A stretch of 64,000 nucleotides of DNA, from positions 440,200,001 to 440,264,000 of the forward strand of contig CM097882.1 in assembly GCA_044892505.1 (NCBI GenBank), in the 5' to 3' direction. Of the stretch, positions 1,482 to 64,000 are shown in pieces. Source of the DNA: Schmidtea nova. Lineage: Eukaryota. Every line of letters begins with the position of its first letter. Position 1 is the first letter of the stretch. Under the pieces are notes generated by a model. It searched no databases. It saw only the letters and a program-made list of their open reading frames with translations, and was not told the origin of the DNA. The translations under genes were made by a program, and so were the position numbers.

Positions 1482-1666
1482 AGCAACTGGAGCAACTCAC
1501 GTTCATGATCAGAGTAGTAGAAGTCATGCCATTTTGACAATTTATTATCAACATGTTTTACTATTTTTAATATATGACAAGCTTATTATGTTTTAAAGGT
1601 TGTGCTGGATTCAGAAGCTCCTCAAGACTTTAAAAGCAAATTTCACCTTGTTGATTTGGCAGGCAG
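1482..1666 (+). CDS. Kinesin motor exons: switch I and start of switch II (1482-1554, 1599-1666)
   Basis: Translation [24 protein letters not shown] / [28 protein letters not shown] and DLAGS are canonical kinesin motifs. The 44-nt intron 1555-1598 is GT...AG. Confidence 0.95.
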
Positions 1667-2467
1667 GTTAGTTTGCAATTTGAAATGCTATTTATCTTTA
1701 AATCTAATATATTAAATATAAATATTTTTTTTAATATTTTCATTATATTAATATATTAATTTAATTAATCTTTCGCGAGAAGCAAGTCAATATTTAGACT
1801 TATTTCACTTTTCATTTCCGAGCGGTAAGTCTAAATATAGACTGAAATGCTTATTTTTGACGTGGGAGCGATATTCTTACTTTAGTTTATATTTAGACTG
1901 GAATCTTACTCCCACCTTATGGGTACGTATTCATATACTTTTTATTGCCTCTCCAAAATATTTTCATACCAGTAGATGATTTCCTGTCTGTGTGGGAGGG
2001 CTGCGTGCTTCATGATAGCATGTAGAAATNNNNNNNNNNNNNNNNNNNNNNNNNNNNNNNNNNNNNNNNNNNNNNNNNNNNNNNNNNNNNNNNNNNNNNN
2101 NNNNNNNNNNNNNNNNNNNNNNNNNNNNNNNNNNNNNNNNNNNNNNNNNNNNNNNNNNNNNNNNNNNNNNNNNNNNNNNNNNNNNNNNNNNNNNNNNNNN
2201 NNNNNNNNNNNNNNNNNNNNNNNNNNNNNNNNNNNNNNNNNNNNNNNNNNNNNNNNNNNNNNNNNNNNNNNNNNNNNNNNNNNNNNNNNNNNNNNNNNNN
2301 NNNNNNNNNNNNNNNNNNNNNNNNNNNNNNNNNNNNNNNNNNNNNNNNNNNNNNNNNNNNNNNNNNNNNNNNNNNNNNNNNNNNNNNNNNNNNNNNNNNN
2401 NNNNNNNNNNNNNNNNNNNNNNNNNNNNNNNNNNNNNNNNNNNTTTATTGATATAAATATAAATAAG

Positions 2468-2505
<38 letters not shown>

Positions 2506-5500
2506 TAGTTCATATAGTTTTTTGTTATTTTCTTTCTTGAATATGCATTTATTCTGTGTCTCTATTTTAATTCAGTTACCCCCTATTTATTTATTTTCAA
2601 ATTTTTGTGACAATTGATGAAATTTATTTGGGGTCGTTTCAGCCACCTAAACCCCCTCACCCTCTTTTGACTTTTCTAATCAAATTCGGATGTTATTTTT
2701 GAATTCAGCTGCCCCATATTAATTTTTTTTCGACAATCGGAAGAACTTTATTTTACCCATTTCAGAAATTTTGAAGGCGACCTGTGTCCCCTTTATGCAA
2801 TTTGTAAAATAAATGGACTTCAAAACTTGAATTAAGTGATCCCCAAAAATAATTTGAGAAATTAAATAAAATTTTTTTTGGGGAGAGGGTTGAAAAATCT
2901 ACATTTCAGTCCCCTTTAACCCCCTTAGGAACCCCTAAATCAAATATCTGACCCCATTTTCATCGATAAAATTACTAGATACCTACTAGGGCCACTTTTT
3001 GTAGACAAATTTTAATTCCATATAGAAGAACATTAGACAACGTACTTTCTCAAATTTAATTCCCGCTCACAATAGGTTAATGTTTTAACANNNNNNNNNN
3101 NNNNNNNNNNNNNNNNNNNNNNNNNNNNNNNNNNNNNNNNNNNNNNNNNNNNNNNNNNNNNNNNNNNNNNNNNNNNNNNNNNNNNNNNNNNNNNNNNNNN
3201 NNNNNNNNNNNNNNNNNNNNNNNNNNNNNNNNNNNNNNNNNNNNNNNNNNNNNNNNNNNNNNNNNNNNNNNNNNNNNNNNNNNNNNNNNNTGACTATAGA
3301 TCAAAATTTTGTTTATAAACAATAACACAATATTTCGGCACAGCCTTTATCAAGTGTGTATTTCTTGATAAAGGCTGTGCCGAAATATTGTGTTATTGTT
3401 TATAAAAAAAATTTTGATCTATAGTCATTATGAGAATTATTGATAATAATAATAAAAAAAGATCAAANNNNNNNNNNNNNNNNNNNNNNNNNNNNNNNNN
3501 NNNNNNNNNNNNNNNNNNNNNNNNNNNNNNNNNNNNNNNNNNNNNNNNNNNNNNNNNNNNNNNNNNNNNNNNNNNNNNNNNNNNNNNNNNNNNNNNNNNN
3601 NNNNNNNNNNNNNNNNNNNACCTTTGATCTTTTTTTATTATTATTATCAATAATTCTCATAATGACTATAGATCAAATTTTTTTATAAACAATAACACAA
3701 TATTTCGGCACAGCCTTTGATAAAGGCTGTGCCGAAATATTGTGTTATTGTTTATAAAAAAATTTGATCTATAGTNNNNNNNNNNNNNNNNNNNNNNNNN
3801 NNNNNNNNNNNNNNNNNNNNNNNNNNNNNNNNNNNNNNNNNNNNNNNNNNNNNNNNNNNNNNNNNNNNNNNNNNNNNNNNNNNNNNNNNNNNNNNNNNNN
3901 NNNNNNNNNNNNNNNNNNNNNNNNNNNNNNNNNNNNNNNNNNNNNNNNNNNNNNNNNNNNNNNNNNNNNNNNNNNNNNNNNNNNNNNNNTAAAATATTTT
4001 CATTTTTCTTTTTAATGAATTATTTGTTTACAATGTAGTGAGCGTGCAAGTTTAGATTCTCCTAATTATTCTTATGAGAGACAAAGAGAGGGGTCAAACA
4101 TAAACAAGTCATTAATGAATCTTGGTACAGTTATTGATGCATTGGGTATGATATTGGAATTATGAAGGTTTATTTTAATGTCAACATTCAGCTAAATTAA
4201 GCTTGAAACCAGACAAAACTTCTCACATTCCTTATCGAAACTCCAAATTGACTTGGATATTAAAGGATTCTCTTGGGGGAAATTCCTTAACAACAATGAT
4301 TGGAAGTGAATATTATTTTCTATAGAATTTAAGAATGTTAAATATTGACATTGGTCTTCTTGCATATTTCCTTGCCTGTTGTTTTTCTTTTCGATAGGTA
4401 ATAATTATCCGTTAATTTTTGCATTTTATATTAATCAGATAGCATTTACTTGATTTCTGCATATGTTTATTTTCCATCATCTCTCGTAGCTCTTTGGATT
4501 TAATATTCGTTCCTGTTTTTTTTGTTGCTTTACATTTTCTATACACTTTGTTCTTTAAAGTGTTGCAACATGAGATGAAAGTGCGCGATGATTGGGGGCA
4601 AATACATAAAAATACTGAAGAGTGAAAAATTTACAATTGATAAAAAAGTACAAAAAATAATTAAAAATTACAAAATATTAAGTCTAAATAGCGTGGGAGA
4701 AATTGGCATGTACGGGTGGCAAATCAGAAGACGAGTACAAATATGATAGTAAAATGAGGGGTCTTCCGAAAGAGATATTCAATAAATAAAAATTTATTGG
4801 AAAAATAATGAACAATTTATTAGTTATGTAGATAACCTGAACAAAAGGAAAACCCTATATAAAATTAGATTAACAAAATCGCAAGCCGAAATAAATAAAA
4901 CTAGAAGGAGTAATAATCCTTCAATGTGATTGATTTTGTTAATGCTGTATATTTTTATTATTTCTGTTACTTTTATTGTAATTATCAATATGCATATTGT
5001 TGTCGCATTTATATGGGTTGATGACCTTGCGGACACCAGGTAACCTTCCTTTTTATTTTTGCTTTGCTGTGGTCGACAATTTGGTCGAGAAAAATTATGA
5101 CAAAAATAAAATAAAATAATAAAAATTCAAAAAAAAATCAATGAAAGATTAACAACAGCAATTCTAAAACTATAGAAGATTGACAAGAAGAAATTGATTA
5201 AAAATAAAACTAAGGAGAATTAAATAAAAAAATTTGCTACCAAACAACGGAAAATAATAAACCAAAGAAATAGGAAATTGATTAGAAAATAAAATTAAAG
5301 AAAATATAAAATCAGAAGTAAGAACGGAAGAGTGATATAGACAGGAAACTTCAGATTAAAAAGAAACGATCTATTGTAATTAAAGAAAACTGATTTCGCC
5401 GATTTCTCCATAAAACTGACAAAACAAAGAAATGACACAGATCCTTTTTTTGAATTGACATTCTATTATCATACGTGAGTACCTGTTTTAGCTTTCGTTA

Positions 5501-8500
5501 AATTTTATTGCTATATTTTCAATAAACTAATTAGTTAAAAATTTGTTATTTGTGAATATTACATCTCACATACTAATATACACACGCACGCACTCACACA
5601 AGTATAGAAGCACACACCCCGAGTGTCTCCGAACGATTTTTGGAAGACTTTCTCGGGCTCTAAAAATTCCTCCCACTACACACATTCCTACTAGTCAAAA
5701 ACATTACCAAACATAATCCACACAACCCACTATTTACATAACAGATTTCATCATATATTCCATTGATTCTTATACCCCCGTAGAAAATATTACACATAAT
5801 AATATTCCACATCACTGATATTTTGGCTTTCTATTTTTTTCTTACAAGTTCTTGCTCATAACTTTTCTTATTCGATTGCAAGATCAATCTAACTGCATTT
5901 TGAATCTCTTTGCTAGTAATAGTTGACATTTTGTTGTAAGTTGCAAATTTGCTAGTGTTTCTATATGGGTAGTTAAAAATTGTTTTCCTAGCGATTACTG
6001 CAACACACATACCATCATGAAGATGTTAAATCTCCCTCACTTCTGTACCAATAGTTACTTCTTGGTAATCTATGTTGGTAATGTACACAATGGTGCAAGA
6101 ATTCGTTGAGCAGGTGAGTTTCGTTGCCAAAACTACTCCTTATTGCATTCCCTCTAACGGGTTCCTGCTGCCGATAGAAGGTCTTACGCTCATATTTAAT
6201 TTAAAGGTCCACTTAAATTTATCAGCTCTTAACTTTCTAAAACATTGCTTTATTATATTTAATATCTTATCTTATCTGTTCCCAAAAATATTCGAATAAC
6301 ACCCTGTTTATTCCTCATGGTTTCCGTCCAATTACATCCTCTAATTTACCTTTACTCTAGCTAATCTATATAATTTAATAAACGATGGTTAGAAGACTAG
6401 ACTGACTATTGGCATAATAACTTCCACTGATCAGTAACTCACGGCCTGTGAGCAGACAGAGCTTTTCCTAAAAAGGTTTAGTTTGGAATTCATCTGAGAC
6501 AGAAGAAAAAACGATTTTCAATTTTTTTATCAAATTCCAAGCATTAACAATTACCTTTGTACAGTACATAGAAACATAAAACATAAGCATACTTACTGAT
6601 TCTGTAATCAGACGTTCCGCAAGAATGATTAACAACAATACTGCTGTGGGCTTGCGAGTGAGAAAATAATTGATAATAATTGAAAATAATTACGTAGTCC
6701 ATTATCAAAACTAAGTGTTAATAGTTAAAAATTATGATTTTTCAACGTCTATTTATACTGTTTTTTTTTCGTTTTATCTCTAACTCAACCGACTTATGAA
6801 ATACGGTTCGTATGCCTACTATTTGCGATTTAATATTCTATTTACTTTTATGCTATTTTTCTGTTTAATGCTCTTATGTGTTATCGTGCACTTTAAATTC
6901 TCTTTTTGTGTTTATTTATTTTACGATGCATTAAAACAAAAAAAATTTATTTATTTTTTACTTTTTTCAAAAAAATACAATAAAAATATTTTTTTTTGAC
7001 AGTCATGTTTTAGGGCATGTCAGTTCTCGATGTCTTTGACATTCGATGATTTTGACAGTCAATATTTTAAAAATCTATTTTTTCGTAGTCGATATTTTAG
7101 GGGTGCGCCGTTTAAGTCGCAAGTGTTAAAATAATAACTAAATTTATTTTCTTAATCTCATCTACTACTTATGATTGAAAGTAGACGCAGTTCAGTATTA
7201 TATAAATATTTTATCTTTGCCAAATAATTGAAATTTTGTAGCAATTACGCCAAATGGAAAATTTTACAACGAAACTATTGCAACTCTGCGATTCGCTAAA
7301 AGAACCAAAGAAATAGAGAACATGCCGATTATTAACGAAGTATTAAAAAGCTTTAAATAATTTTTAATCCTTGGAATTAAATAAAGGATCCGAATGTCAA
7401 ACTGATCAGAGAATTGAGAGAGCAGATAATAATATTACAAAATCAGCTGAATAGCAAAGTAATAATTGGAAATTTTCCATCAGTGTTAACTTAAATGTTT
7501 CAGCAAATGCCAGAGGATTTGCTCGTAAGATCACAGAAGGTGATCAATTTATATTTCAGAAATTATATTAATTATAATAAATGGATGCAATAATAAATAG
7601 GTCGACGAGATGTCCCGAAACTGGACGAAACAAAGAAAGAACAGTATATCATACAAAAAATACAGTTCAGCAGTAAGTGCTAAATTGAAAAAAAACATTA
7701 TTTTCGAAACTGACCAAGTACCATGTAGATTGGGAAATAATTTTTTTGTCTAAGTAACTGCTAAATATTTATTGTTTACAAAACTAAAAATTATGAAACA
7801 TTTTAAAATTTAAAAAATATATTTTTTCCAACTAAAATAAATAATAATGTTGGCGTTGCTTAAATTAATGCAAAAACACAGTTAAATGCTCAGAGAAGTT
7901 TGTGCAGATTAATAAAAGTGTTGGGTTATTAATGAGAAGTCGGTTGGTATCTGACTCCGTTTTTCTTTCGTTCACAAAATAAATTAGACCCAACACAGTA
8001 ATCTTTATTTTAAGTTACAATAGTTGTCTGCACTCTTCTGCGTTAGGGTAGAACACCCAATGGGATATCTCCCTTTCTGGTACGAAAGAAGATCGAGTAA
8101 ATTCAGATTCTACCTTTGGTTTTCTCTTAGAGTTTCCACCTCTTGCTTCCACTAGTTGCTCAATTTTCAATTCTCAAGATTTATCTTCGACAACTTTGTC
8201 AATATTGGAAACTTGTCCTTAGTTTATATACTGCCTTTTTCATTTCATCCTGTCGCCTTAATTGGATCTATCAAAATAAAATAATCAAATTGCCTCTGCC
8301 GCTGCGTAATTGAATTTTGCTGACAATGGGTTTGCGACTTTTCCCGGAGCATTCTTTGCTCATCCAATTTATTTGGATAATTATATGATTTTGTTGATGC
8401 CCCGGATTTCCCACATCGCTCGGGTTTCCCATTTGGCAATTAATTATTTTAAATTAATTTATATTTTCTTAATATTTCTTTCTGGGTGTCTCTTTTTAAT

Positions 8501-11500
8501 TTTATATACCCATATTTTAATTCGTCTCATCATTTGGCATCCTCTCATACCGGTTTCCCCTTTAAGGCTTTATTTTTGAATTTCATAAATTTTTTAATTA
8601 ATGTTTGCACTTTAATTATTATTTTTCCAAATTTGTGTTTTTATTGATTTGCACATAGCTTTTGTGCCTTTTAATTTAATTTTCTGTTTATTTTAAAAAC
8701 CCCAACAAAGGGCAAAATTAATAATTGAAGTACAAAAATTAATTAAAAATTGAAAAAATTTATATTTTTCTTGGGAAACAAATTTTGGTGGATGACAAAT
8801 GATGAGATAAACATAATAATTAAAATAGTTTTTTTTTTAAAATACAATTTAATTAAAAATCAATTTAATTTCTGTTTGAAAACTCCGATCTATCACTAAG
8901 ATTATTAAGTTATTAAAAATTTACTTTTAAGGAGACCGGTGACCGTTACAGACCAGACGCACATGCAAAAATCAAATTGTTTTTGTTTTTTTTAAATTTT
9001 GATTATTAGATTACGAGGAGAATGAGAGAGAGAATCTTATATAATGAATGGCAAGTTTTAGATAGTTGCCGCTTGGTCGAAAAGAAAAAAAAGAATAAAA
9101 CAAGACTATAGAAGATTTAAAAAAGAAAGCGAAAGAACCAATTTAAAGTCAACGTATTTTCAAATAATCGTGAAGACGTTCAACCTTTGGGTCATCTACT
9201 ATATTTAATTGAATTGCAGATTTTCAATAAATTTATTGTCTTGGGTATTACCTTTGTTCAATTTGCAAAAAAGCAAGAAGAATTAGATTTCGATACCGAC
9301 TAAAGCAAATTTATTCCAGCAATAATTATAAATCAAATGTCAGTGAAGCCTTTTATCTTTTCCACCATTGATCTATTTTCATTTAGAGTTCCTTTTATAT
9401 TCATTTCTTTTCAGACTTCATCAATATTTTGTTTTATATTTAATATGAATTTTTATTACAGACTTTCATTTTTTTACTTCGAACACTGTGAATGAGTTGT
9501 GACGAAAATTCGTGTAATATATAAAAGCAACATAATGATATATAATAGAAAAGGTCATTTATTAAATATGATCCGATATTTCGAGAGCGATCAATGAAAT
9601 AAAAGTTAATTAAAGTTGTTTTTAAAAACTATATTTTTATACTGTATATTTGTATATAAATAATAAATAATAGCGTTTCCTATAGCGTTTTCATATTTGT
9701 CTATATTAACAAATTTAATTTGTTATTTTATTATAAATATTAATTACTAAATTATATATATCTAGGTTTTGTATTTAAATAGTAAATAATACTTGTTAAA
9801 TTTGAAAAAAATTCAATAAATGACAAAATTAATTGAGACAATGAAATATCCTTTTTTGTTAATATTTTTATTTCTCTAATCCAGCGGTTCTCAAAGTGGG
9901 GTCCATGGTCCCATGGGGGCCGCGAAATGGTTTTGGCAGAACCATGGAAAACGAAGTTTTAATCACTACTTTTTTTTATTAAAGAGGTCCGCAAGCTATC
10001 AAAAAATTTAAAGGGACTCCCGCTGAGGAAATTTTAAAAAGTTTCAGAACCGCTGAAATATTAGAATTCAAATGCAACCAGATTATAATCAATTAACCGT
10101 TTCGATAAGCTATCATACTCACCAAAAACATATGAATGCTCAGTAAAGCGTTTAATTTATCAGATTTTCCAGGTCAGTAAAAAAATAACATTAATAAGTT
10201 TGTTGTTATTTATAAGTGAGATTCCTTATAAAAGGTCTAATGTTATAAAATATTAATTAAATTGTGATTTTTAATATAGCGAAAACTTCAAATTTATTTG
10301 CTTAACTAAATAGTTAAATATATCTTATCCAAGACTCAAAATTTATAAAAAATATTCTTACACAAAAATCAAAATTAATTAAAAGTAACATGACTTGTAA
10401 AAATGTGCAGAATAATAACTCATCAATCACTTAAAAACCTTAACTACAAAATAATAACATTTAACACTAGCTACAATGACTTTAGTAATTTCTTACAAGG
10501 TCATACAAATAAAACTGATAGTTTAAAACAAGATTGAAATTATTATATAAGAAATCAATAAGTAATTCTAAAATATTTTTAAAAAATAATAAATTGGTAT
10601 TCTTAGGTAAAATAATTTAAAAATATATTAATTTTTAAATATATTAAAATTATTTTCTTATTTCAAGGAAGAAGATGGATCGCATGATGCTGGTATGAAA
10701 ATAAATTATTAATATTTTATTAAAAATTTTTAGATGAAGGGTCAATTAATAAAGGCAGTCAGGTAATTTTAAATAATTTAATTATATTATCAAATTCCTA
10801 ATGATTTTAAAAGGGGCTTTTCATAAGTAACGTTCAACATCTGGTTCTTTTTAATCATCCTTTTATTAAACAACAAAATTTTAATTCTTTAATATTTTGA
10901 CACACGAAAATATATAAATAAAACTATAAAAAAACTATAAAACGATTACAAAAATAACACTAATAAATGAAGATTTCACACATTTTCTAATTCAAAGGTC
11001 ATTATATCAAATGAGAAACCCTATCTCGTTCTTTTAAACTCTTGATCATAATTTTGAATCCTGTGTATGAAATGCACACCAAAATATTTTTCATTAACAT
11101 TCACAGATGAAAAGTTTTAAAATTCAATTTGGTTCCTATTTAAATAAATACCTAAATGGCATAAACATTAAAAAAAAATTTTAATTTCGGAGTTATTTTA
11201 CTATATTTCAACATACACACATTTGAATCCTGAAATTAAAGTTAAATTAACTTTTAAATGTATTTTATTTTCAAACAAAAACAAATTATGAAAATTATAT
11301 TTTTTAACGATAAGCCGAAGAACATTTGAATTACTAATATATGATAAATGATTCTTGTAATCCAAGGTTCTCCAACCTTTAATACTCTTTGGAATCTTTG
11401 AAATGATATTTATGTTTCAAATAACCTTAACATAAATTAATTTAATATATAATTAAGAAATCTTCTTTTATTAACGTGACATTCATAAGGAAAACATAAT

Positions 11501-20500: not shown

Positions 20501-21044
20501 TTAGCAAATTATTATTTATATTATAAAAATTTGTATAAATGCCATTTGAATAAAATAAATTCGTGCAGAAAGCGTGTAAAAAATCTAAATATTTCTATTT
20601 AAGTTTTGAATTTTGGTTAATATTTTTACAGAAATATTAGTAAAAAGCAGGGTTTCCCAAAGTTTTACTCCGGGGGCAAAATTCTAAATTCCAAAATATT
20701 TCGCTGGCCAAAATATAAAAAAACTTAAAAAAGTAATATATATATATATACAGGCCCGAAGAGAGCTTCAATGGGGCCCGGGCCAAAAATATTTCTCGGG
20801 GCCCACATATTATGTTTTAAAAAAATGTTTAATTTTCTGTAATTTGGTCTTGATATTTGATATTTGATATACAAAAAGTATTAAGCTTCATAAAAAATGG
20901 TATAAATAAGCATGTAATAATTTTTTTCGGATTATTTTTTATTACTTCAGAATTTTTAAATTTTCAAAAGAAGCTTAATGAACTATTTATGACATGAAAT
21001 ATTTTTCTTCGTTAAAAAATTAAAATTTTTATCCTGATTAATTT

Positions 21045-21114
<70 letters not shown>

Positions 21115-54100: not shown

Positions 54101-57100
54101 TTGTGCAAAGATGTTGCAGAATCCCATCTTCCAGATTCGACAGTAATTAGAAATGCAGACATAGTAGATGACATCGTTGATGAAGTAACTGAGGAACGTA
54201 AAGTTGGGCTTGAAAATGGACAAAAGTTGTTATTTGATGCATTGGATAAGGGTGAGTTAGACAATCTCAAAGGCAAAGAACTAGTTGAAAGTTTAGAAAT
54301 AATGAAAGCATTGATTCCGAAATCCAAAGCGGGAGAGAAAGAACGGAAATTTCTAGACGACGTAATAGACGATTTGAAAAAGTCTTTAAAAAGTGGATCA
54401 AAAGTGAAAATCGACAAGTCTGTTTGTGAACAATTAAAAGCTTTAGGTAAAAAGAGTGAAAAGAGATTAGTTAATTCCGATGAGGATAGCAACAAACTGC
54501 TCGAAGCAATTAGATGTTTATTTGATGAGGAAGAAGGCGAAAAAGAAAAGTTACTGAACCGGAAAGATATTGACAATTTACTGTGTGGAATAAAAGTCGC
54601 AAAAGATGCATTGAAAAATGAAATAAGTGAAGCGAAACTGATAGAGTTAGAAGAGATATTATTGAAGGAAGTCTCTGATGGAAAAGATCTCATTAGACTA
54701 GAAGCGACAGTCAATGAACCTCTCATTGGTATTCTATGTGAAGCTGTCCAAATTCAATCGAGCATTCCGGATATTGCGGAACGTATAAGAAAATCTCGAC
54801 AAGACGAAATTGAAAACAGTCGACGACCAATTGAAACAATCTTGAAAGAATTAGTGGAAACGTCAAAGAGCGATCAAATAAAATTGAAAGGCCAAGATTT
54901 ATCAAAATTGTCAAAAGCTATTGATACAATTGAAAGTAGGATTAACGAAACTCCAGACGCTGAAAGATCCAAGGAGTGGAAAGCAAATAAATCTTTACTG
55001 GAATCTATTCTCCCTAAAGTACAAGAAGTCGTTGATTGCAAATCAAAAGAATTAGATCTGAACAAAGACGAAGCACAAAGACTAAGCAAATTGTGCAAAG
55101 ATGTTGCAGAATCCCATCTTCCAGATTCGACAGTAATTAGAAATGCAGACATAGTAGATGACATCGTTGATGAAGTAACTGAGGAACGTAAAGTTGGGCT
55201 TGAAAATGGACAAAAGTTGTTATTTGATGCATTGGATAAGGATGAGTTAGACAATCTCAAAGGCAAAGAACTAGTTGAAAGTTTAGAAATAATGAAAGCA
55301 TTGATTCCGAAATCCAAAGCGGGAGAGAAAGAACGGAAATTTCTAGACGACGTAATAGACGATTTGAAAAAGTCTTTAAAAAGTGGATCAAAAGTGAAAA
55401 TCGACAAGTCTGTTTGTGAACAATTAAAAGCTTTAGGTAAAAAGAGTGAAAAGAGATTAGTTAATTCCGATGAGGATAGCAACAAACTGCTCGAAGCAAT
55501 TAGATGTTTATTTGATGAGGAAGAAGGCGAAAAAGAAAAGTTACTGAACCGGAAAGATATTGACAATTTACTGTGTGGAATAAAAGTCGCAAAAGATGCA
55601 TTGAAAAATGAAATAAGTGAAGCGAAACTGATAGAGTTAGAAGAGATATTATTGAAGGAAGTCTCTGATGGAAAAGATCTCATTAGACTAGAAGCGACAG
55701 TCAATGAACCTCTCATTGGTATTCTATGTGAAGCTGTCCAAATTCAATCGAGCATTCCGGATATTGCGGAACGTATAAGAAAATCTCGACAAGACGAAAT
55801 TGAAAACAGTCGACGACCAATTGAAACAATCTTGAAAGAATTAGTGGAAACGTCAAAGAGCGATCAAATAAAATTGAAAGGCCAAGATTTATCAAAATTG
55901 TCAAAAGCTATTGATACAATTGAAAGTAGGATTAACGAAACTCCAGACGCTGAAAGATCCAAGGAGTGGAAAGCAAATAAATCTTTACTGGAATCTATTC
56001 TCCCTAAAGTACAAGAAGTCGTTGATTGCAAATCAAAAGAATTAGATCTGAACAAAGACGAAGCACAAAGACTAAGCAAATTGTGCAAAGATGTTGCAGA
56101 ATCCCATCTTCCAGATTCGACAGTAATTAGAAATGCAGACATAGTAGATGACATCGTTGATGAAGTAACTGAGGAACGTAAAGTTGGGCTTGAAAATGGA
56201 CAAAAGTTGTTATTTGATGCATTGGATAAGGATGAGTTAGACAATCTCAAAGGCAAAGAACTAGTTGAAAGTTTAGAAATAATGAAAGCATTGATTCCGA
56301 AATCCAAAGCGGGAGAGAAAGAACGGAAATTTCTAGACGACGTAATAGACGATTTGAAAAAGTCTTTAAAAAGTGGATCAAAAGTGAAAATCGACAAGTC
56401 TGTTTGTGAACAATTAAAAGCTTTAGGTAAAAAGAGTGAAAAGAGATTAGTTAATTCCGATGAGGATAGCAACAAACTGCTCGAAGCAATTAGATGTTTA
56501 TTTGATGAGGAAGAAGGCGAAAAAGAAAAGTTACTGAACCGGAAAGATATTGACAATTTACTGTGTGGAATAAAAGTCGCAAAAGATGCATTGAAAAATG
56601 AAATAAGTGAAGCGAAACTGATAGAGTTAGAAGAGATATTATTGAAGGAAGTCTCTGATGGAAAAGATCTCATTAGACTAGAAGCGACAGTCAATGAACC
56701 TCTCATTGGTATTCTATGTGAAGCTGTCCAAATTCAATCGAGCATTCCGGATATTGCGGAACGTATAAGAAAATCTCGACAAGACGAAATTGAAAACAGT
56801 CGACGACCAATTGAAACAATCTTGAAAGAATTAGTGGAAACGTCAAAGAGCGATCAAATAAAATTGAAAGGCCAAGATTTATCAAAATTGTCAAAAGCTA
56901 TTGATACAATTGAAAGTAGGATTAACGAAACTCCAGACGCTGAAAGATCCAAGGAGTGGAAAGCAAATAAATCTTTACTGGAATCTATTCTCCCTAAAGT
57001 ACAAGAAGTCGTTGATTGCAAATCAAAAGAATTAGATCTGAACAAAGACGAAGCACAAAGACTAAGCAAATTGTGCAAAGATGTTGCAGAATCCCATCTT

Positions 57101-60100
57101 CCAGATTCGACAGTAATTAGAAATGCAGACATAGTAGATGACATCGTTGATGAAGTAACTGAGGAACGTAAAGTTGGGCTTGAAAATGGACAAAAGTTGT
57201 TATTTGATGCATTGGATAAGGATGAGTTAGACAATCTCAAAGGCAAAGAACTAGTTGAAAGTTTAGAAATAATGAAAGCATTGATTCCGAAATCCAAAGC
57301 GGGAGAGAAAGAACGGAAATTTCTAGACGACGTAATAGACGATTTGAAAAAGTCTTTAAAAAGTGGATCAAAAGTGAAAATCGACAAGTCTGTTTGTGAA
57401 CAATTAAAAGCTTTAGGTAAAAAGAGTGAAAAGAGATTAGTTAATTCCGATGAGGATAGCAACAAACTGCTCGAAGCAATTAGATGTTTATTTGATGAGG
57501 AAGAAGACGAAAAAGAAAAGTTACTGAACCGGAAAGATATTGACAATTTACTGTGTGGAATAAAAGTCGCAAAAGATGCATTGAAAAATGAAATAAGTGA
57601 AGCGAAACTGATAGAGTTAGAAGAGATATTATTGAAGGAAGTCTCTGATGGAAAAGATCTCATTAGACTAGAAGCGACAGTCAATGAACCTCTCATTGGT
57701 ATTCTATGTGAAGCTGTCCAAATTCAATCGAGCATTCCGGATATTGCGGAACGTATAAGAAAATCTCGACAAGACGAAATTGAAAACAGTCGACGACCAA
57801 TTGAAACAATCTTGAAAGAATTAGTGGAAACGTCAAAGAGCGATCAAATAAAATTGAAAGGCCAAGATTTATCAAAATTGTCAAAAGCTATTGATACAAT
57901 TGAAAGTAGGATTAACGAAACTCCAGACGCTGAAAGATCCAAGGAGTGGAAAGCAAATAAATCTTTACTGGAATCTATTCTCCCTAAAGTACAAGAAGTC
58001 GTTGATTGCAAATCAAAAGAATTAGATCTGAACAAAGACGAAGCACAAAGACTAAGCAAATTGTGCAAAGATGTTGCAGAATCCCATCTTCCAGATTCGA
58101 CAGTAATTAGAAATGCAGACATAGTAGATGACATCGTTGATGAAGTAACTGAGGAACGTAAAGTTGGGCTTGAAAATGGACAAAAGTTGTTATTTGATGC
58201 ATTGGATAAGGGTGAGTTAGACAATCTCAAAGGCAAAGAACTAGTTGAAAGTTTAGAAATAATGAAAGCATTGATTCCGAAATCCAAAGCGGGAGAGAAA
58301 GAACGGAAATTTCTAGACGACGTAATAGACGATTTGAAAAAGTCTTTAAAAAGTGGATCAAAAGTGAAAATCGACAAGTCTGTTTGTGAACAATTAAAAG
58401 CTTTAGGTAAAAAGAGTGAAAAGAGATTAGTTAATTCCGATGAGGATAGCAACAAACTGCTCGAAGCAATTAGATGTTTATTTGATGAGGAAGAAGGCGA
58501 AAAAGAAAAGTTACTGAACCGGAAAGATATTGACAATTTACTGTGTGGAATAAAAGTCGCAAAAGATGCATTGAAAAATGAAATAAGTGAAGCGAAACTG
58601 ATAGAGTTAGAAGAGATATTATTGAAGGAAGTCTCTGATGGAAAAGATCTCATTAGACTAGAAGCGACAGTCAATGAACCTCTCATTGGTATTCTATGTG
58701 AAGCTGTCCAAATTCAATCGAGCATTCCGGATATTGCGGAACGTATAAGAAAATCTCGACAAGACGAAATTGAAAACAGTCGACGACCAATTGAAACAAT
58801 CTTGAAAGAATTAGTGGAAACGTCAAAGAGCGATCAAATAAAATTGAAAGGCCAAGATTTATCAAAATTGTCAAAAGCTATTGATACAATTGAAAGTAGG
58901 ATTAATGAAACTCCAGACGCTGAAAGATCCAAGGAGTGGAAAGCAAATAAATCTTTACTGGAATCTATTCTCCCTAAAGTACAAGAAGTCGTTGATTGCA
59001 AATCAAAAGAATTAGATCTGAACAAAGACGAAGCACAAAGACTAAGCAAATTGTGCAAAGATGTTGCAGAATCCCATCTTCCAGATTCGACAGTAATTAG
59101 AAATGCAGACATAGTAGATGACATCGTTGATGAAGTAACTGAGGAACGTAAAGTTGGGCTTGAAAATGGACAAAAGTTGTTATTTGATGCATTGGATAAG
59201 GGTGAGTTAGACAATCTCAAAGGCAAAGAACTAGTTGAAAGTTTAGAAATAATGAAAGCATTGATTCCGAAATCCAAAGCGGGAGAGAAAGAACGGAAAT
59301 TTCTAGACGACGTAATAGACGATTTGAAAAAGTCTTTAAAAAGTGGATCAAAAGTGAAAATCGACAAGTCTGTTTGTGAACAATTAAAAGCTTTAGGTAA
59401 AAAGAGTGAAAAGAGATTAGTTAATTCCGATGAGGATAGCAACAAACTGCTCGAAGCAATTAGATGTTTATTTGATGAGGAAGAAGGCGAAAAAGAAAAG
59501 TTACTGAACCGGAAAGATATTGACAATTTACTGTGTGGAATAAAAGTCGCAAAAGATGCATTGAAAAATGAAATAAGTGAAGCGAAACTGATAGAGTTAG
59601 AAGAGATATTATTGAAGGAAGTCTCTGATGGAAAAGATCTCATTAGACTAGAAGCGACAGTCAATGAACCTCTCATTGGTATTCTATGTGAAGCTGTCCA
59701 AATTCAATCGAGCATTCCGGATATTGCGGAACGTATAAGAAAATCTCGACAAGACGAAATTGAAAACAGTCGACGACCAATTGAAACAATCTTGAAAGAA
59801 TTAGTGGAAACGTCAAAGAGCGATCAAATAAAATTGAAAGGCCAAGATTTATCAAAATTGTCAAAAGCTATTGATACAATTGAAAGTAGGATTAACGAAA
59901 CTCCAGACGCTGAAAGATCCAAGGAGTGGAAAGCAAATAAATCTTTACTGGAATCTATTCTCCCTAAAGTACAAGAAGTCGTTGATTGCAAATCAAAAGA
60001 ATTAGATCTGAACAAAGACGAAGCACAAAGACTAAGCAAATTGTGCAAAGATGTTGCAGAATCCCATCTTCCAGATTCGACAGTAATTAGAAATGCAGAC

Positions 60101-63100
60101 ATAGTAGATGACATCGTTGATGAAGTAACTGAGGAACGTAAAGTTGGGCTTGAAAATGGACAAAAGTTGTTATTTGATGCATTGGATAAGGGTGAGTTAG
60201 ACAATCTCAAAGGCAAAGAACTAGTTGAAAGTTTAGAAATAATGAAAGCATTGATTCCGAAATCCAAAGCGGGAGAGAAAGAACGGAAATTTCTAGACGA
60301 CGTAATAGACGATTTGAAAAAGTCTTTAAAAAGTGGATCAAAAGTGAAAATCGACAAGTCTGTTTGTGAACAATTAAAAGCTTTAGGTAAAAAGAGTGAA
60401 AAGAGATTAGTTAATTCCGATGAGGATAGCAACAAACTGCTCGAAGCAATTAGATGTTTATTTGATGAGGAAGAAGGCGAAAAAGAAAAGTTACTGAACC
60501 GGAAAGATATTGACAATTTACTGTGTGGAATAAAAGTCGCAAAAGATGCATTGAAAAATGAAATAAGTGAAGCGAAACTGATAGAGTTAGAAGAGATATT
60601 ATTGAAGGAAGTCTCTGATGGAAAAGATCTCATTAGACTAGAAGCGACAGTCAATGAACCTCTCATTGGTATTCTATGTGAAGCTGTCCAAATTCAATCG
60701 AGCATTCCGGATATTGCGGAACGTATAAGAAAATCTCGACAAGACGAAATTGAAAACAGTCGACGACCAATTGAAACAATCTTGAAAGAATTAGTGGAAA
60801 CGTCAAAGAGCGATCAAATAAAATTGAAAGGCCAAGATTTATCAAAATTGTCAAAAGCTATTGATACAATTGAAAGTAGGATTAACGAAACTCCAGACGC
60901 TGAAAGATCCAAGGAGTGGAAAGCAAATAAATCTTTACTGGAATCTATTCTCCCTAAAGTACAAGAAGTCGTTGATTGCAAATCAAAAGAATTAGATCTG
61001 AACAAAGACGAAGCACAAAGACTAAGCAAATTGTGCAAAGATGTTGCAGAATCCCATCTTCCAGATTCGACAGTAATTAGAAATGCAGACATAGTAGATG
61101 ACATCGTTGATGAAGTAACTGAGGAACGTAAAGTTGGGCTTGAAAATGGACAAAAGTTGTTATTTGATGCATTGGATAAGGGTGAGTTAGACAATCTCAA
61201 AGGCAAAGAACTAGTTGAAAGTTTAGAAATAATGAAAGCATTGATTCCGAAATCCAAAGCGGGAGAGAAAGAACGGAAATTTCTAGACGACGTAATAGAC
61301 GATTTGAAAAAGTCTTTAAAAAGTGGATCAAAAGTGAAAATCGACAAGTCTGTTTGTGAACAATTAAAAGCTTTAGGTAAAAAGAGTGAAAAGAGATTAG
61401 TTAATTCCGATGAGGATAGCAACAAACTGCTCGAAGCAATTAGATGTTTATTTGATGAGGAAGAAGGCGAAAAAGAAAAGTTACTGAACCGGAAAGATAT
61501 TGACAATTTACTGTGTGGAATAAAAGTCGCAAAAGATGCATTGAAAAATGAAATAAGTGAAGCGAAACTGATAGAGTTAGAAGAGATATTATTGAAGGAA
61601 GTCTCTGATGGAAAAGATCTCATTAGACTAGAAGCGACAGTCAATGAACCTCTCATTGGTATTCTATGTGAAGCTGTCCAAATTCAATCGAGCATTCCGG
61701 ATATTGCGGAACGTATAAGAAAATCTCGACAAGACGAAATTGAAAACAGTCGACGACCAATTGAAACAATCTTGAAAGAATTAGTGGAAACGTCAAAGAG
61801 CGATCAAATAAAATTGAAAGGCCAAGATTTATCAAAATTGTCAAAAGCTATTGATACAATTGAAAGTAGGATTAACGAAACTCCAGACGCTGAAAGATCC
61901 AAGGAGTGGAAAGCAAATAAATCTTTACTGGAATCTATTCTCCCTAAAGTACAAGAAGTCGTTGATTGCAAATCAAAAGAATTAGATCTGAACAAAGACG
62001 AAGCACAAAGACTAAGCAAATTGTGCAAAGATGTTGCAGAATCCCATCTTCCAGATTCGACAGTAATTAGAAATGCAGACATAGTAGATGACATCGTTGA
62101 TGAAGTAACTGAGGAACGTAAAGTTGGGCTTGAAAATGGACAAAAGTTGTTATTTGATGCATTGGATAAGGATGAGTTAGACAATCTCAAAGGCAAAGAA
62201 CTAGTTGAAAGTTTAGAAATAATGAAAGCATTGATTCCGAAATCCAAAGCGGGAGAGAAAGAACGGAAATTTCTAGACGACGTAATAGACGATTTGAAAA
62301 AGTCTTTAAAAAGTGGATCAAAAGTGAAAATCGACAAGTCTGTTTGTGAACAATTAAAAGCTTTAGGTAAAAAGAGTGAAAAGAGATTAGTTAATTCCGA
62401 TGAGGATAGCAACAAACTGCTCGAAGCAATTAGATGTTTATTTGATGAGGAAGAAGGCGAAAAAGAAAAGTTACTGAACCGGAAAGATATTGACAATTTA
62501 CTGTGTGGAATAAAAGTCGCAAAAGATGCATTGAAAAATGAAATAAGTGAAGCGAAACTGATAGAGTTAGAAGAGATATTATTGAAGGAAGTCTCTGATG
62601 GAAAAGATCTCATTAGACTAGAAGCGACAGTCAATGAACCTCTCATTGGTATTCTATGTGAAGCTGTCCAAATTCAATCGAGCATTCCGGATATTGCGGA
62701 ACGTATAAGAAAATCTCGACAAGACGAAATTGAAAACAGTCGACGACCAATTGAAACAATCTTGAAAGAATTAGTGGAAACGTCAAAGAAGGATCAAATA
62801 AAATTGAAAGGCCAAGATTTATCAAAATTGTCAAAAGCTATTGATACAATTGAAAGTAGGATTAACGAAACTCCAGACGCTGAAAGATCCAAGGAGTGGA
62901 AAGCAAATAAATCTTTACTGGAATCTATTCTCCCTAAAGTACAAGAAGTCGTTGATTGCAAATCAAAAGAATTAGATCTGAACAAAGACGAAGCACAAAG
63001 ACTAAGCAAATTGTGCAAAGATGTTGCAGAATCCCATCTTCCAGATTCGACAGTAATTAGAAATGCAGACATAGTAGATGACATCGTTGATGAAGTAACT

Positions 63101-64000
63101 GAGGAACGTAAAGTTGGGCTTGAAAATGGACAAAAGTTGTTATTTGATGCATTGGATAAGGGTGAGTTAGACAATCTCAAAGGCAAAGAACTAGTTGAAA
63201 GTTTAGAAATAATGAAAGCATTGATTCCGAAATCCAAAGCGGGAGAGAAAGAACGGAAATTTCTAGACGACGTAATAGACGATTTGAAAAAGTCTTTAAA
63301 AAGTGGATCAAAAGTGAAAATCGACAAGTCTGTTTGTGAACAATTAAAAGCTTTAGGTAAAAAGAGTGAAAAGAGATTAGTTAATTCCGATGAGGATAGC
63401 AACAAACTGCTCGAAGCAATTAGATGTTTATTTGATGAGGAAGAAGGCGAAAAAGAAAAGTTACTGAACCGGAAAGATATTGACAATTTACTGTGTGGAA
63501 TAAAAGTCGCAAAAGATGCATTGAAAAATGAAATAAGTGAAGCGAAACTGATAGAGTTAGAAGAGATATTATTGAAGGAAGTCTCTGATGGAAAAGATCT
63601 CATTAGACTAGAAGCGACAGTCAATGAACCTCTCATTGGTATTCTATGTGAAGCTGTCCAAATTCAATCGAGCATTCCGGATATTGCGGAACGTATAAGA
63701 AAATCTCGACAAGACGAAATTGAAAACAGTCGACGACCAATTGAAACAATCTTGAAAGAATTAGTGGAAACGTCAAAGAGCGATCAAATAAAATTGAAAG
63801 GCCAAGATTTATCAAAATTGTCAAAAGCTATTGATACAATTGAAAGTAGGATTAATGAAACTCCAGACGCTGAAAGATCCAAGGAGTGGAAAGCAAATAA
63901 ATCTTTACTGGAATCTATTCTCCCTAAAGTACAAGAAGTCGTTGATTGCAAATCAAAAGAATTAGATCTGAACAAAGACGAAGCACAAAGACTAAGCAAA
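1482..64000 (+). CDS. Multi-exon gene model: kinesin-3 (STARD9/KIF16-like) motor joined to a giant tandem-repeat tail; 5' and 3' ends lie outside the window
   Basis: 15 exons with GT-AG boundaries read by eye: 1482-1554, 1599-1666, 4039-4145, 4192-4305, 7242-7339, 7387-7458, 7504-7539, 7601-7672, 10668-10692, 10734-10762, 19553-19593, 19644-20184, 20223-20300, 25686-25768, 33837->64000. Reading phase is consistent at 13 of 14 junctions. The exception is 10762/19553, across an 8.8-kb intron containing N gaps. Confidence 0.65.
2472..2501. repeat. (TA)n microsatellite
   Basis: Perfect TA dinucleotide run. Confidence 0.95.
3291..3775. repeat. Chain of alternating inverted repeats (palindromes), bounded and interrupted by N gaps
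   Basis: Arm 3291-3354 is nearly the reverse complement of 3364-3427 (9-nt spacer). A second palindrome is centred at 3719-3721. Segments 3428-3467 and 3623-3662 are reverse complements flanking the gap 3468-3620. Confidence 0.9.
3321..3362 (-). ncRNA. Candidate type I hammerhead ribozyme (U3:A8 variant, Penelope-type)
   Basis: Minus strand reads aauacacac UUGAUAA a GGC ugu GCC GAAA UAUU / guguuauu. This gives a core with compensatory U3-A8, a 3-bp stem II, palindromic AUAU stem III, and stem I of 4 bp + 1-nt bulge + 4 bp. Predicted cut between 3329 and 3328. Folded by eye only. Confidence 0.55.
4039..4305 (+). CDS. Kinesin motor exons (4039-4145, 4192-4305)
   Basis: Translation [36 protein letters not shown] / [38 protein letters not shown]. 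[13 protein letters not shown] is typical of kinesin-3. The 46-nt intron is 4146-4191, and the phase joins exon 1599-1666. Confidence 0.95.
5879..5956 (-). pseudogene. Histone H2B-derived fragment
   Basis: [26 protein letters not shown] aligns to canonical H2B [26 protein letters not shown] at 18 of 26 positions. Flanking codons do not resemble H2B. Confidence 0.75.
7242..7672 (+). CDS. Kinesin motor end, neck and first coiled coil (exons 7242-7339, 7387-7458, 7504-7539, 7601-7672)
   Basis: Translation [33 protein letters not shown] / [24 protein letters not shown] / [12 protein letters not shown] / [24 protein letters not shown]. ETxxTLRFA and [20 protein letters not shown] motifs are kinesin-3 hallmarks. 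Introns are 47, 45 and 61 nt. Confidence 0.92.
9882..10055. mobile_element. hAT (Charlie/Buster-like) MITE, 174 bp
   Basis: TIRs cagcggttctcaaa and tttcagaaccgctg (13/14 match). No intact 8-bp TSD is seen. Confidence 0.7.
10668..10762 (+). CDS. Two putative micro-exons (10668-10692, 25 nt; 10734-10762, 29 nt)
   Basis: GC-richer islands in AT-rich DNA with ag/gt boundaries and a 41-nt intron. Together they give 18 in-frame codons [18 protein letters not shown], and phase 0 matches the preceding exon. Confidence 0.6.
11599..11819. mobile_element. piggyBac-type MITE, 221 bp
   Basis: Perfect 15-bp TIRs CCACTTCATGCTTGG / CCAAGCATGAAGTGG. TTAA lies at 11595-11598 and GTAA (one mismatch) at 11820-11823. 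Confidence 0.8.
14982..15631. mobile_element. Non-autonomous hAT element (650 bp) with perfect 8-bp TSD
   Basis: TIRs CAGGGCCGGCT on both ends, with TSD tgtatgca at 14974-14981 and 15632-15639. It retains a hAT C-terminal remnant [13 protein letters not shown] just after 15311. Confidence 0.92.
15066..15303. mobile_element. hAT (Buster/Charlie-like) MITE, 238 bp, nested in the previous element
   Basis: TIRs caggggtcggtaac / gttgccgacccctg, with perfect TSD atgtaaat at 15058-15065 and 15304-15311. Confidence 0.93.
19553..20300 (+). CDS. Ser-rich linker exons of the kinesin gene (19553-19593, 19644-20184, 20223-20300)
   Basis: The three exons are separated by 50-nt and 38-nt GT-AG introns and are mutually in phase. 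The middle exon contains the track ORF 19805-20188 (…[45 protein letters not shown]…). Confidence 0.7.
20648..21425. mobile_element. hAT-type MITE with internal insertion and (TA)n
   Basis: Ends cagggtttcccaa and ttagggaacccctg are inverted. Flanks gtaaaaag / ttataaag match at 6/8, consistent with a decayed TSD. A caggcccg...gggcccgggcc end of another element starts at 20751. Confidence 0.6.
21050..21110. repeat. (TA)n microsatellite
   Basis: Perfect TA run of about 60 bp. Confidence 0.95.
22540..23350 (-). mobile_element. Degenerate hAT transposase fragments (internally deleted)
   Basis: Minus-strand pieces [35 protein letters not shown] (hAT CxxH motif) and [22 protein letters not shown]. 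Stops and frameshifts are present. Confidence 0.8.
24022..24630. repeat. Modular minisatellite built on ttggagggatctgtattctttcaaagatttt
   Basis: About a dozen core copies with two recurring linkers: aattagaatattaa (giving a 45-bp unit) and cttttcgtaagcttgataatatttgttgcagata. Confidence 0.9.
25686..25768 (+). CDS. Isolated 83-nt exon of the kinesin gene
   Basis: acag/…/gtaata boundaries; translation [29 protein letters not shown]. It starts in phase 2 (matching 20300) and ends in phase 1 (matching 33837). Confidence 0.7.
27135..30574 (-). mobile_element. Near-intact autonomous-type hAT DNA transposon (3,440 bp)
   Basis: TIRs CAGGGCCGGCCCTAG and CAGGCCCGGCCTTAG (13/15). Perfect 8-bp TSD cctggata at 27127-27134 and 30575-30582. 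Encodes a transposase on the minus strand. Confidence 0.95.
27458..29991 (-). pseudogene. hAT transposase (TTF-type Zn finger, ZMYM1-like DUF4371 core, hAT dimerisation domain) with two lesions
   Basis: Track ORFs 29707-29991, 27778-29694 and 27458-27790. Motifs: [71 protein letters not shown]. One in-frame TAA at 29707-29709 and one frameshift near 27810. Confidence 0.92.
30976..31025 (-). ncRNA. Candidate type I hammerhead ribozyme 3' of a Penelope-like element
   Basis: Minus strand reads auuagaga UUGACGA g GAUUAU uuu AUAAUC GAAA AUUU / ucuc acu uaau. This gives a U3:G8 core, 6-bp stem II, palindromic AAUU stem III, and stem I of 4 bp + 3-nt bulge + 4 bp. Predicted cut between 30987 and 30986. 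Confidence 0.55.
31458..32025 (-). mobile_element. Penelope-like retroelement 3' fragment (GIY-YIG endonuclease), degenerate
   Basis: [20 protein letters not shown]…TCKMENC…[34 protein letters not shown]…SSVYRHL, then in another frame [31 protein letters not shown]. This is the Penelope GIY-YIG layout, with the YIG glycine mutated to E and a frameshift. Confidence 0.85.
32026..32330 (-). mobile_element. Internally deleted mariner fragment
   Basis: Minus-strand [10 protein letters not shown] (N-terminal region) joined to [21 protein letters not shown]…[13 protein letters not shown]. Confidence 0.8.
32985..33402 (+). pseudogene. act: Actin pseudogene fragment (central part), no introns seen
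   Basis: Pieces EEH…[65 protein letters not shown]…[17 protein letters not shown]…YIALDF*LEM…SSLEK match conserved actin. Multiple stops and frameshifts. Confidence 0.92.
33837..64000 (+). CDS. Giant coding exon, open for at least 10,054 codons (frame +2), running off the window
   Basis: Acceptor atttag at 33831-33836. Codons start at 33839 ([13 protein letters not shown]…). Frame read without a stop through 726 unique codons into the repeats. K/E/D/L/I-rich codon usage; no indel in any repeat copy. Confidence 0.9.
36017..64000 (+). repeat. Coding tandem array: 28 full + 0.27 copies of a 990-bp (330-aa) unit, >99% identical
   Basis: Unit starts at 36017 + 990n (checked at 37007 and 63737). 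Unit protein [55 protein letters not shown]…[21 protein letters not shown]. The exact 990-bp periodicity is also visible in the ORF track. Confidence 0.98.

What the first reader, a model, noticed from the sequence alone, without database searches (positions are those of the whole stretch)
1482..64000. A kinesin-3 (STARD9/KIF16-like) motor apparently spliced to the giant repeat tail: a >10,500-aa motor protein
Seen: motor exons chain through linker exons in matching phase (20300 to 25686 phase 2; 25768 to 33837 phase 1, CAA G|GT AAA), with no other intact host gene in between. Established: THVH..SSRSHAI, [13 protein letters not shown] and [16 protein letters not shown] resemble human STARD9 (about 4,700 aa, C-terminal START domain) and KIF16B. 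Repeat-tailed kinesins exist (Leishmania K39, 39-aa repeats). Inference: a kinesin-3 with a titin-scale tail of 330-aa repeats, more than twice the length of STARD9. It could act as a tether, ruler or cytoskeletal scaffold. I know of no such protein.
Basis: partly seen in the sequence, partly recalled or inferred. Interest (0 to 1): 0.9.

Follow-up and report, generated by a model that had tools for sequence, protein, structure and literature searches.

The report
Giant repeat gene beside kinesin motor
A flatworm-like genome holds a real open reading frame of over 10,000 codons, built from 28 or more near-identical 330-residue helical repeats, just downstream of the back half of a kinesin-3-type motor gene on the same strand; that the two are spliced into one record-size motor protein is possible but not shown.

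Summary
Both objects are real. Exons at 1482-7458 encode a collinear kinesin motor from profile position 190 to its end, plus a kinesin-3-type neck. The four early assembly gaps lie inside one intron, and DLAG|SER reads through across it. From 33837 to the window end runs one unbroken frame of 10,058 codons: a 726-codon unique part, then 28.3 copies of a 990-bp unit, each 0-6 bases from consensus.

The giant frame has 173 open codons before its first ATG (chance about 2.5e-7), so it needs upstream coding exons. Exons 25686-25768, 19644-20185 and 19553-19593 fit in phase and carry no usable start.

The link from 7.5 kb to 19.5 kb is unresolved. That stretch has two gaps and no FHA domain was found. 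The repeat has no family. I put one fused gene at about 0.45 and two genes at about 0.42. Kinesin-3 is weakly supported; STARD9/KIF16 identity is not. The scan noted other giant repeat ORFs elsewhere in this genome.

The parts
1482..1554 (+). Motor exon A (switch I: [24 protein letters not shown])
   Evidence: Pfam Kinesin profile 190-209, E 0.0012. AG/GT borders read. Switch I reads HDQSSRSH, i.e. H where N is usual.
1599..1666 (+). Motor exon B ([22 protein letters not shown] + AG); the preceding intron is 44 nt
   Evidence: Sequence read. Joins exon C to give the switch II motif DLAGSER.
1667..4038 (+). Intron holding the four assembly gaps 2030-2443, 3091-3290, 3468-3619 and 3776-3989
   Evidence: The flanking exons join in frame with no motor residues missing.
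4039..4145 (+). Motor exon C (S)[35 protein letters not shown]
   Evidence: Pfam Kinesin 244-269 (232-270). Its only PDB hit is the Neurospora kinesin-3 2owm.
4192..4305 (+). Motor exon D ([38 protein letters not shown])
   Evidence: Pfam Kinesin 269-301, E 7e-12. PDB hits are spread over many kinesin families.
7242..7339 (+). Motor exon E (T)[32 protein letters not shown], the end of the motor domain
   Evidence: Pfam Kinesin 304-327 of 327. Sequence.
7387..7458 (+). Neck exon F ([24 protein letters not shown]); the preceding intron is 47 nt
   Evidence: Pfam Kinesin_assoc PF16183 positions 6-28, E 0.015, below the cut-off. Only kinesin-3 chains match in the whole PDB (5djn E 0.0044; KIF13B E 0.43).
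7504..7672 (+). Candidate post-neck exons G (7504-7524 or 7504-7539) and H (7601-7672). Inferred only.
   Evidence: Phase-0 continuation after a 45-nt intron, ending at a GTAAGT donor at 7673. No domain match.
10668..10762 (+). Two candidate mini-exons (10668-10692 and 10734-10762) split by a 41-nt intron, open in two frames
   Evidence: The frame [18 protein letters not shown] fits the kinesin exons' phase but not 19553. The frame [17 protein letters not shown] fits 19553 and holds an ATG at 10675.
19553..19593 (+). Linker exon ([13 protein letters not shown]). No in-frame ATG; needs a phase-2 donor upstream.
   Evidence: codon score in the top 1-2% of AG..GT decoys. A 50-nt intron leads to the next exon.
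19644..20185 (+). Linker exon, 181 serine-rich codons. Donor AAAAG|GTAAAC; an in-frame TAA follows if it is left unspliced.
   Evidence: Open stretch found. Highest coding score on either strand between 7.3 and 20.4 kb. No Pfam family.
20223..20300 (+). Doubtful.
   Evidence: In phase, but its codon score sits at the decoy median. Skipping it keeps the frame. The donor GTTTTA resembles that of exon A.
25686..25768 (+). Bridge exon ([27 protein letters not shown]), no in-frame ATG
   Evidence: Ranks 1-2 of 366 phase-compatible open AG..GT bridges between 20185 and 33837.
27461..29997 (-). hAT transposase gene lying inside the putative 8-kb intron
   Evidence: Pfam DUF4371 1.1e-14 and Dimer_Tnp_hAT 1.9e-11.
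33837..35991 (+). Unique N-terminal part of the giant exon. It opens with a basic [13 protein letters not shown] cluster; the first in-frame ATG is at 34346.
   Evidence: 0 stops in frame against 72 and 94 in the other two frames; 173 open codons before the first ATG, P about 2.5e-7. No Pfam family.
35992..64000 (+). Tandem array of the 990-bp (330-aa) unit: 28 full copies plus 263 nt, running off the window
   Evidence: 0-6 differences per unit, no indels, 8 synonymous and 11 non-synonymous variants. Predicted all-helical at low confidence.

Best explanation
One very large gene on the + strand. A kinesin-3-type motor, whose first half lies upstream of the window, is followed by its neck. Small serine-, asparagine- and lysine-rich linker exons follow (19553-19593, 19644-20185, 25686-25768). 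Last comes a giant exon starting at 33837 that encodes a 726-residue unique region and at least 28 near-identical 330-residue alpha-helical units.

Shown: both ends exist; the giant exon cannot start translation by itself; its coding exons reach upstream at least to 19553.

Inferred: the join between about 7.7 kb and 19.5 kb, and therefore the fusion itself.

If fused, the protein would have more than 10,500 residues. It would act as a motor carrying a very long modular helical rod, that is, a motor-positioned tether or scaffold. The rod length would be set by a recently expanded or homogenised repeat count.
For: - The motor and neck exons are collinear with Pfam Kinesin 190-327 and then Kinesin_assoc, with intact GT-AG introns and no frame breaks.
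- The giant frame is open for 10,058 codons. It has 173 codons before the first ATG, with 0 of 200,000 shuffles open and an analytic P of 2.5e-7.
- The bridge exon 25686-25768 ranks 1-2 of 366 phase-compatible candidates and beats every ATG-first-exon alternative.
- Exons 19553-19593 and 19644-20185 carry no usable start and are joined by a 50-nt intron, the same size class as the motor introns of 44-47 nt.
- Same strand, correct order, and only transposon ORFs in between.
- The kinesin has no visible tail of its own: no strong coding signal on the + strand between 7.7 and 19.5 kb apart from one fragment at 13079-13318.
- Four small runs of one study (291-528 M letters) hold 60-100% of the words of 33837-36000. 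For a genome this size that suggests transcripts rather than shotgun DNA. This is inference only.
Against: - There is no transcript or junction evidence.
- The 12-kb stretch between 7.7 and 19.5 kb has two gaps totalling 1.4 kb and no resolved exon chain.
- The frame of exon 10734-10762 that joins 19553 is the lower-scoring of its two open frames. That frame contains an ATG at 10675 in a good initiation context with an in-frame stop 9 codons upstream, which is a natural start for a separate gene.
- No FHA or other kinesin-3 tail domain was found.
- The splice sites of this gene carry little information.
- The codon score is weak: a wrong frame over true exon F outscores the true frame, 13.3 against 10.3.
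Confidence: 0.45

Rival explanations
1. Two adjacent genes on the same strand. The kinesin ends somewhere between 7.7 and 19.5 kb. The giant repeat protein is a separate non-motor protein that starts there, for example at the ATG at 10675 ([22 protein letters not shown]...), and runs through 19553, 19644-20185 and 25686-25768 into the giant exon.
For: - The ATG at 10675 sits in AAGATGG, has an in-frame stop 9 codons upstream, and lies in exactly the frame that joins 19553.
- The other open frame of the same mini-exons fits the kinesin's phase but cannot join 19553.
- No FHA domain was found.
- Other giant tandem-repeat ORFs without motors are noted elsewhere in this genome (unchecked notes).
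- The repeat unit has no kinesin-linked relatives. Its only relative is a 118-residue stretch in a retroelement-like protein.
Against: - The kinesin would be left with little or no tail. A start at 10675 leaves only 3 kb for the tail, the 3' end and a promoter.
- Coding signal between 7.7 and 19.5 kb is sparse.
- The mini-exons at 10.7 kb are themselves unproven.
Confidence: 0.42
2. The kinesin exons are the relic of a truncated or decaying duplicate, and only the giant repeat gene is functional.
For: - Switch I reads HDQSSRSH, with H at the usually conserved N.
- Exon E scores weakly: 14.9 bits, and kinesin-3 is not its top PDB match.
- A pogo-type transposase remnant lies at 29-705, just upstream.
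- The front half of the motor is not visible.
Against: Six consecutive exons keep frame, phase and GT-AG borders, and keep the [24 protein letters not shown] and TLRFA motifs.
Confidence: 0.08
3. The array is a young satellite or an assembly over-expansion that merely happens to be open, and is not translated as 10,000 residues.
For: - The units are about 99.9% identical, so openness of the whole array needs only one open 330-codon unit.
- The copy number cannot be checked here.
- A 280-289-codon antisense frame is also open in every unit.
Against: - One 330-codon unit being open has P of about 3e-13 at this composition (own calculation, done the same way).
- The frame continues seamlessly from 726 unique open codons, against 72 and 94 stops in the other frames.
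- The unit length is a multiple of 3 and no indel occurs in 28 kb.
- Synonymous variants are 8 of 19, against about 21% expected.
- A distant protein relative of the unit exists: 34% identity over 118 residues without gaps.
Confidence: 0.05

Closest known systems
STARD9 (KIF16A), vertebrate kinesin-3
   Same: N-terminal kinesin-3 motor followed by a very long tail. Described as a protein of about 517 kDa with motor, FHA and C-terminal START domains (PMC3383713).
   Different: - The tail here would be more than twice as long and made of near-identical 330-residue helical repeats.
- No FHA domain was found.
- A START domain cannot be tested, as it would lie beyond the window.
- STARD9 is reported as conserved only in vertebrates (PMC3383713).
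- The fusion itself is unproven.
KIF16B / KIF13 / KIF1 kinesin-3 motors
   Same: The neck exon [14 protein letters not shown] matches only kinesin-3 chains in the PDB (5djn, KIF13B) and matches Pfam Kinesin_assoc. The [13 protein letters not shown] motif resembles these motors (from my own knowledge).
   Different: - The other motor exons do not rank kinesin-3 first.
- Loop 12 is short, with 3 lysines.
- No FHA, PX or PH domain was found in the window.
Leishmania K39 kinesin
   Same: A kinesin whose tail carries tandem repeats: 39-residue repeats used as a diagnostic antigen (PMC8480608, PMC6355020).
   Different: The repeat unit there is 39 residues, not 330. The organism is a protist, the scale is far smaller, and there is no sequence relation.
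Other giant tandem-repeat ORFs of this same genome (scan note s1-356147)
   Same: Tens of kilobases of unbroken frame made of near-identical long units.
   Different: That one is a basic 190-residue unit read as a secreted glue or mucus protein. Here the unit is acidic overall (net about -13 per unit), helical, has no signal peptide in view, and lies behind a motor gene. I did not check that note.

Membership tests
Kinesin superfamily (motor domain PF00225) | Collinear match to the motor-domain profile with the switch I, switch II and microtubule-binding motifs | tested here: met
   Exons A, C, D and E match profile positions 190-209, 244-269, 269-301 and 304-327. [21 protein letters not shown] and LGGNS are present. 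No single exon except D passes the whole-protein cut-off.
Kinesin superfamily (motor domain PF00225) | P-loop (GQTGSGKT) and the N-terminal half of the motor | not testable with these tools
   Profile positions 1-189 would lie upstream of window position 1. Nothing motor-like was seen in 706-1481.
Kinesin-3 | Family-specific neck linker and neck coil (NEDxNxKLIREL) and the Kinesin_assoc region | tested here: met
   INE|[14 protein letters not shown]. The only PDB hits are kinesin-3 chains (5djn E 0.0044; KIF13B E 0.43). PF16183 positions 6-28, E 0.015, below the cut-off. The support is weak.
Kinesin-3 | FHA domain after the neck | tested here: inconclusive
   None found by Pfam on the longer open stretches or by motif search. 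Small exons and 1.4 kb of gaps could hide one.
Kinesin-3 | Lysine-rich K-loop in loop 12 | tested here: inconclusive
   Loop 12 reads [12 protein letters not shown]: three lysines and short.
STARD9 | C-terminal START domain | not testable with these tools
   The reading frame runs off the window at 64000, still inside the array.
KIF16B | C-terminal PX domain | not testable with these tools
   Same reason: the C-terminus lies beyond the window.
Single transcription unit (motor plus repeat tail) | Spliced RNA joining the motor exons to 33837 | not testable with these tools
No RNA run is on record. No related proteins or transcripts turned up among 1.84 billion representatives.

The most novel reading that the evidence does not exclude
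The motor and the repeat tail are one protein of more than 10,500 residues. It would be the largest kinesin known: a kinesin-3 motor dragging a rod of 28 or more identical 330-residue helical modules, whose length, and so its reach as a tether or ruler, is set by a fast-evolving repeat count.
Probability: 0.45. Interest if true: 0.8.

Novelty: new variant of a known kind. Interest (0 to 1): 0.55.

Why it matters
If fused, this would more than double the size record for a kinesin. It would be a natural case of a motor joined to a titin-scale modular rod, useful for asking how tail length and repeat number tune cargo tethering or cytoskeletal spacing in flatworm cells.

Even if not fused, the window holds an orphan intracellular-looking giant protein. 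It has at least 10,058 codons, no known family and no signal peptide in view. Its repeats are about 99.9% identical, which is a clear example of very recent in-frame expansion or homogenisation of a 990-bp coding unit.

Tried and rejected
- **Homologues of the giant ORF.** The exhaustive search of 1.84 billion representatives gave one weak hit, P0001. The Atlas gave none. A metagenome locus scan gave none.
- **Fold.** AlphaFold on two units from a single sequence gave pLDDT 49. It is usable only as 'all-helical', so I ran no fold search.
- **Sub-repeats.** An HMM built from six hand-cut modules and a circular BLOSUM autocorrelation showed no period near 55 beyond shuffled controls. Self-BLAST found nothing.
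- **Kinesin subfamily from single exons.** Exons A, B, D and E do not discriminate.
- **FHA search.** Pfam on the long open stretches and motif patterns found nothing.
- **Exon chaining by codon score with short introns.** This has little power. A wrong frame over a true exon outscores the right one, so I did not build a full model for 7.5-19.5 kb.
- **Spliced-leader start at 33837 with translation from the ATG at 34346.** Rejected, because the 173 upstream codons are open at P of about 2.5e-7.
- **Direct 20185 to 33837 splice.** Rejected, because it creates a TAA.
Full report
**What is in the window**

The window is AT-rich (24-37% G+C) and has the look of an animal genome, with short introns and transposon remnants. 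Earlier notes of this scan call the genome a flatworm's; I did not check that.

Two objects on the + strand are real.

**The kinesin**

Six exons were read directly from the DNA:
- A 1482-1554
- B 1599-1666
- C 4039-4145
- D 4192-4305
- E 7242-7339
- F 7387-7458

All have AG/GT borders and matching phases, and three of the introns are 44-47 nt. Taken exon by exon, Pfam places A at Kinesin profile 190-209, C at 244-269, D at 269-301 and E at 304-327, which is the end of the model. F falls on Kinesin_assoc positions 6-28, with E 0.015, below the cut-off.

So the window holds only the back half of a motor plus its neck. Positions 1-189, with the P-loop, would lie upstream, and nothing motor-like is visible in 706-1481. 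The switch I, switch II and microtubule-binding motifs are intact, except that switch I reads HDQSSRSH, with H where N is usual.

**The assembly gaps**

The four gaps between 2030 and 3989 all lie inside the intron between B and C. B ends ...HLVDLAG plus AG, and C begins T GAG CGT. The junction therefore reads DLAGSER with no residue missing. Those gaps do not affect the reading frame.

The gaps at 16747-17226, 18066-18988 and 23659-23792 lie in regions that would be introns of the proposed gene. They may hide exons, and I made no attempt to fill them.

**Which kinesin**

In the whole PDB the neck exon matches only kinesin-3 chains (5djn E 0.0044; KIF13B E 0.43). Exon C matches only a Neurospora kinesin-3. 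Exons A, B, D and E do not discriminate.

Kinesin-3 is therefore weakly supported. A specific STARD9 or KIF16 identity is not:
- no FHA domain was found;
- START or PX domains would lie past the window;
- STARD9 is described as vertebrate-only (PMC3383713).

**The giant frame**

From 33827 to 64000 there is no stop for 10,058 codons. The first 726 codons after the acceptor at 33837 are unique sequence. That stretch has 0 stops in frame, against 72 and 94 in the other two frames.

From about 35992 the sequence is a tandem array of a 990-bp unit: 28 full copies plus 263 nt, cut by the window end. Every unit is exactly 990 bp and lies 0-6 bases from the consensus, with no indels. Some variants are shared by non-adjacent units, and 8 of 19 variants are synonymous against about 21% expected.

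The unit is rich in K, E, L and D, has a net charge of about -13, shows 3.4-3.7-residue hydrophobic periodicity, and is predicted all-helical at low confidence (pLDDT 49). It matches no Pfam family and no Atlas cluster.

Among 1.84 billion representative proteins it has a single relative, P0001, which shares 34% identity over 118 residues without gaps. P0001 comes from a 2-kb metagenome contig and looks like a retroelement polyprotein carrying a foreign insert. I found no support for an internal six-module structure.

**Does the giant frame need upstream exons? Yes.**

Its first in-frame ATG is codon 174 (34346). A stretch of 173 open codons at that composition has P of about 2.5e-7, and none of 200,000 shuffles stayed open. 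A start at 34346, including one after spliced-leader addition at 33837, is therefore rejected.

A direct splice from 20185 would create a TAA. It has no in-frame ATG.

The 181-codon exon 19644-20185 has the top coding score on either strand in 7.3-20.4 kb. It supplies the needed phase-2 donor, and it has its first methionine only at about codon 80. It is preceded, across a typical 50-nt intron, by 19553-19593, which has no ATG and a codon score in the top 1-2% of decoys.

So the gene that owns the giant exon reaches upstream of 19553.

**The unresolved link**

Between the last kinesin exon (7458, or candidate followers up to 7672) and 19553 lie 12 kb, including 1.4 kb of gaps.

That exon and its neighbour 10668-10692 are open in two frames:
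- The better-scoring frame ([18 protein letters not shown]) enters in phase 0, as the kinesin exons would require. It leaves in phase 0, which cannot join 19553.
- The other frame ([17 protein letters not shown]) does join 19553. It contains an ATG at 10675 in an AAGATGG context, with an in-frame stop nine codons upstream. That is just what the first coding exon of an independent gene would look like.

Splice sites in this gene carry little information. My codon score is weak too: a wrong frame over true exon F scores 13.3 against 10.3 for the true frame. I therefore did not force a model.

**Arguments each way**

For one gene:
- same strand and correct order;
- only transposon ORFs in between (hAT transposase 27461-29997; other remnants);
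- a kinesin head with no visible tail next to a tail with no visible head.

For two genes:
- the candidate start at 10675;
- no FHA domain found;
- other motor-less giant repeat ORFs are noted in the same genome (unchecked).

**Read evidence**

Four runs of one study hold 60-100% of the words of 33837-36000, but none is on record as RNA. Their small size (291-528 M letters) makes shotgun DNA of a genome this large an unlikely source, so transcription is plausible. That is inference only.

**Verdict**

I put one fused gene at about 0.45, two adjacent genes at about 0.42, a kinesin relic beside a functional giant gene at about 0.08, and an untranslated or mis-assembled array at about 0.05.

If fused, the protein would be the largest kinesin known. 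It would most plausibly work as a motor-positioned tether or scaffold, with a rod length set by repeat number. The repeat array and the need for upstream exons are shown; the motor-tail join and any function are inferred.

Noticed in passing
window 27461-29997 (- strand): An apparently intact hAT-type transposase gene: a 642-codon open stretch with DUF4371, then the hAT dimerisation domain in an adjacent 116-codon stretch. It lies inside the putative 8-kb intron before the giant exon.
   Followed up: partly
window 29-705 (+ strand): Remnant of a pogo/Tigger-type DDE_1 transposase (E 5e-14), broken into several frames, just upstream of the first visible motor exon.
   Followed up: partly
L001 (JGI metagenome contig, 2071 nt), P0001 residues 265-382: A retroelement-like polyprotein with a protease-like start and an integrase-like end by eye, and no Pfam hit of its own. 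It carries a 118-residue ungapped stretch 34% identical to unit residues 148-265. This is either a captured host fragment or a shared origin. It is the only relative of the repeat found anywhere.
   Followed up: partly
window 36064-63636 (- strand), once per unit: Every repeat unit also has an ATG-started 280-codon antisense ORF (289 open codons). This is most likely a by-product of the purine-rich coding strand.
   Followed up: no
window 12922-13427 (+ strand): A cluster of K/E-rich, coding-like segments in three different frames, including an 81-codon open stretch at 13079-13321 with a G8 run. No Pfam match. It could be a decayed retro-copy, or exons.
   Followed up: partly
window 24059-24631: A nested minisatellite with periods of 45, 92 and 247 nt; the 247-nt copies are 98% alike. 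It lies in the putative intron between 20300 and 25686.
   Followed up: no
window 31546-32106 (- strand): A 187-codon open stretch with a mariner-like HDNARSH motif followed by a GIY-YIG-like motif, both judged by eye. No Pfam hit at E 0.1. Probably a composite transposon remnant.
   Followed up: partly
window 33839-33890: The giant exon opens with a dense basic cluster ([13 protein letters not shown]) that looks like a nuclear localisation signal or a microtubule-binding patch.
   Followed up: no
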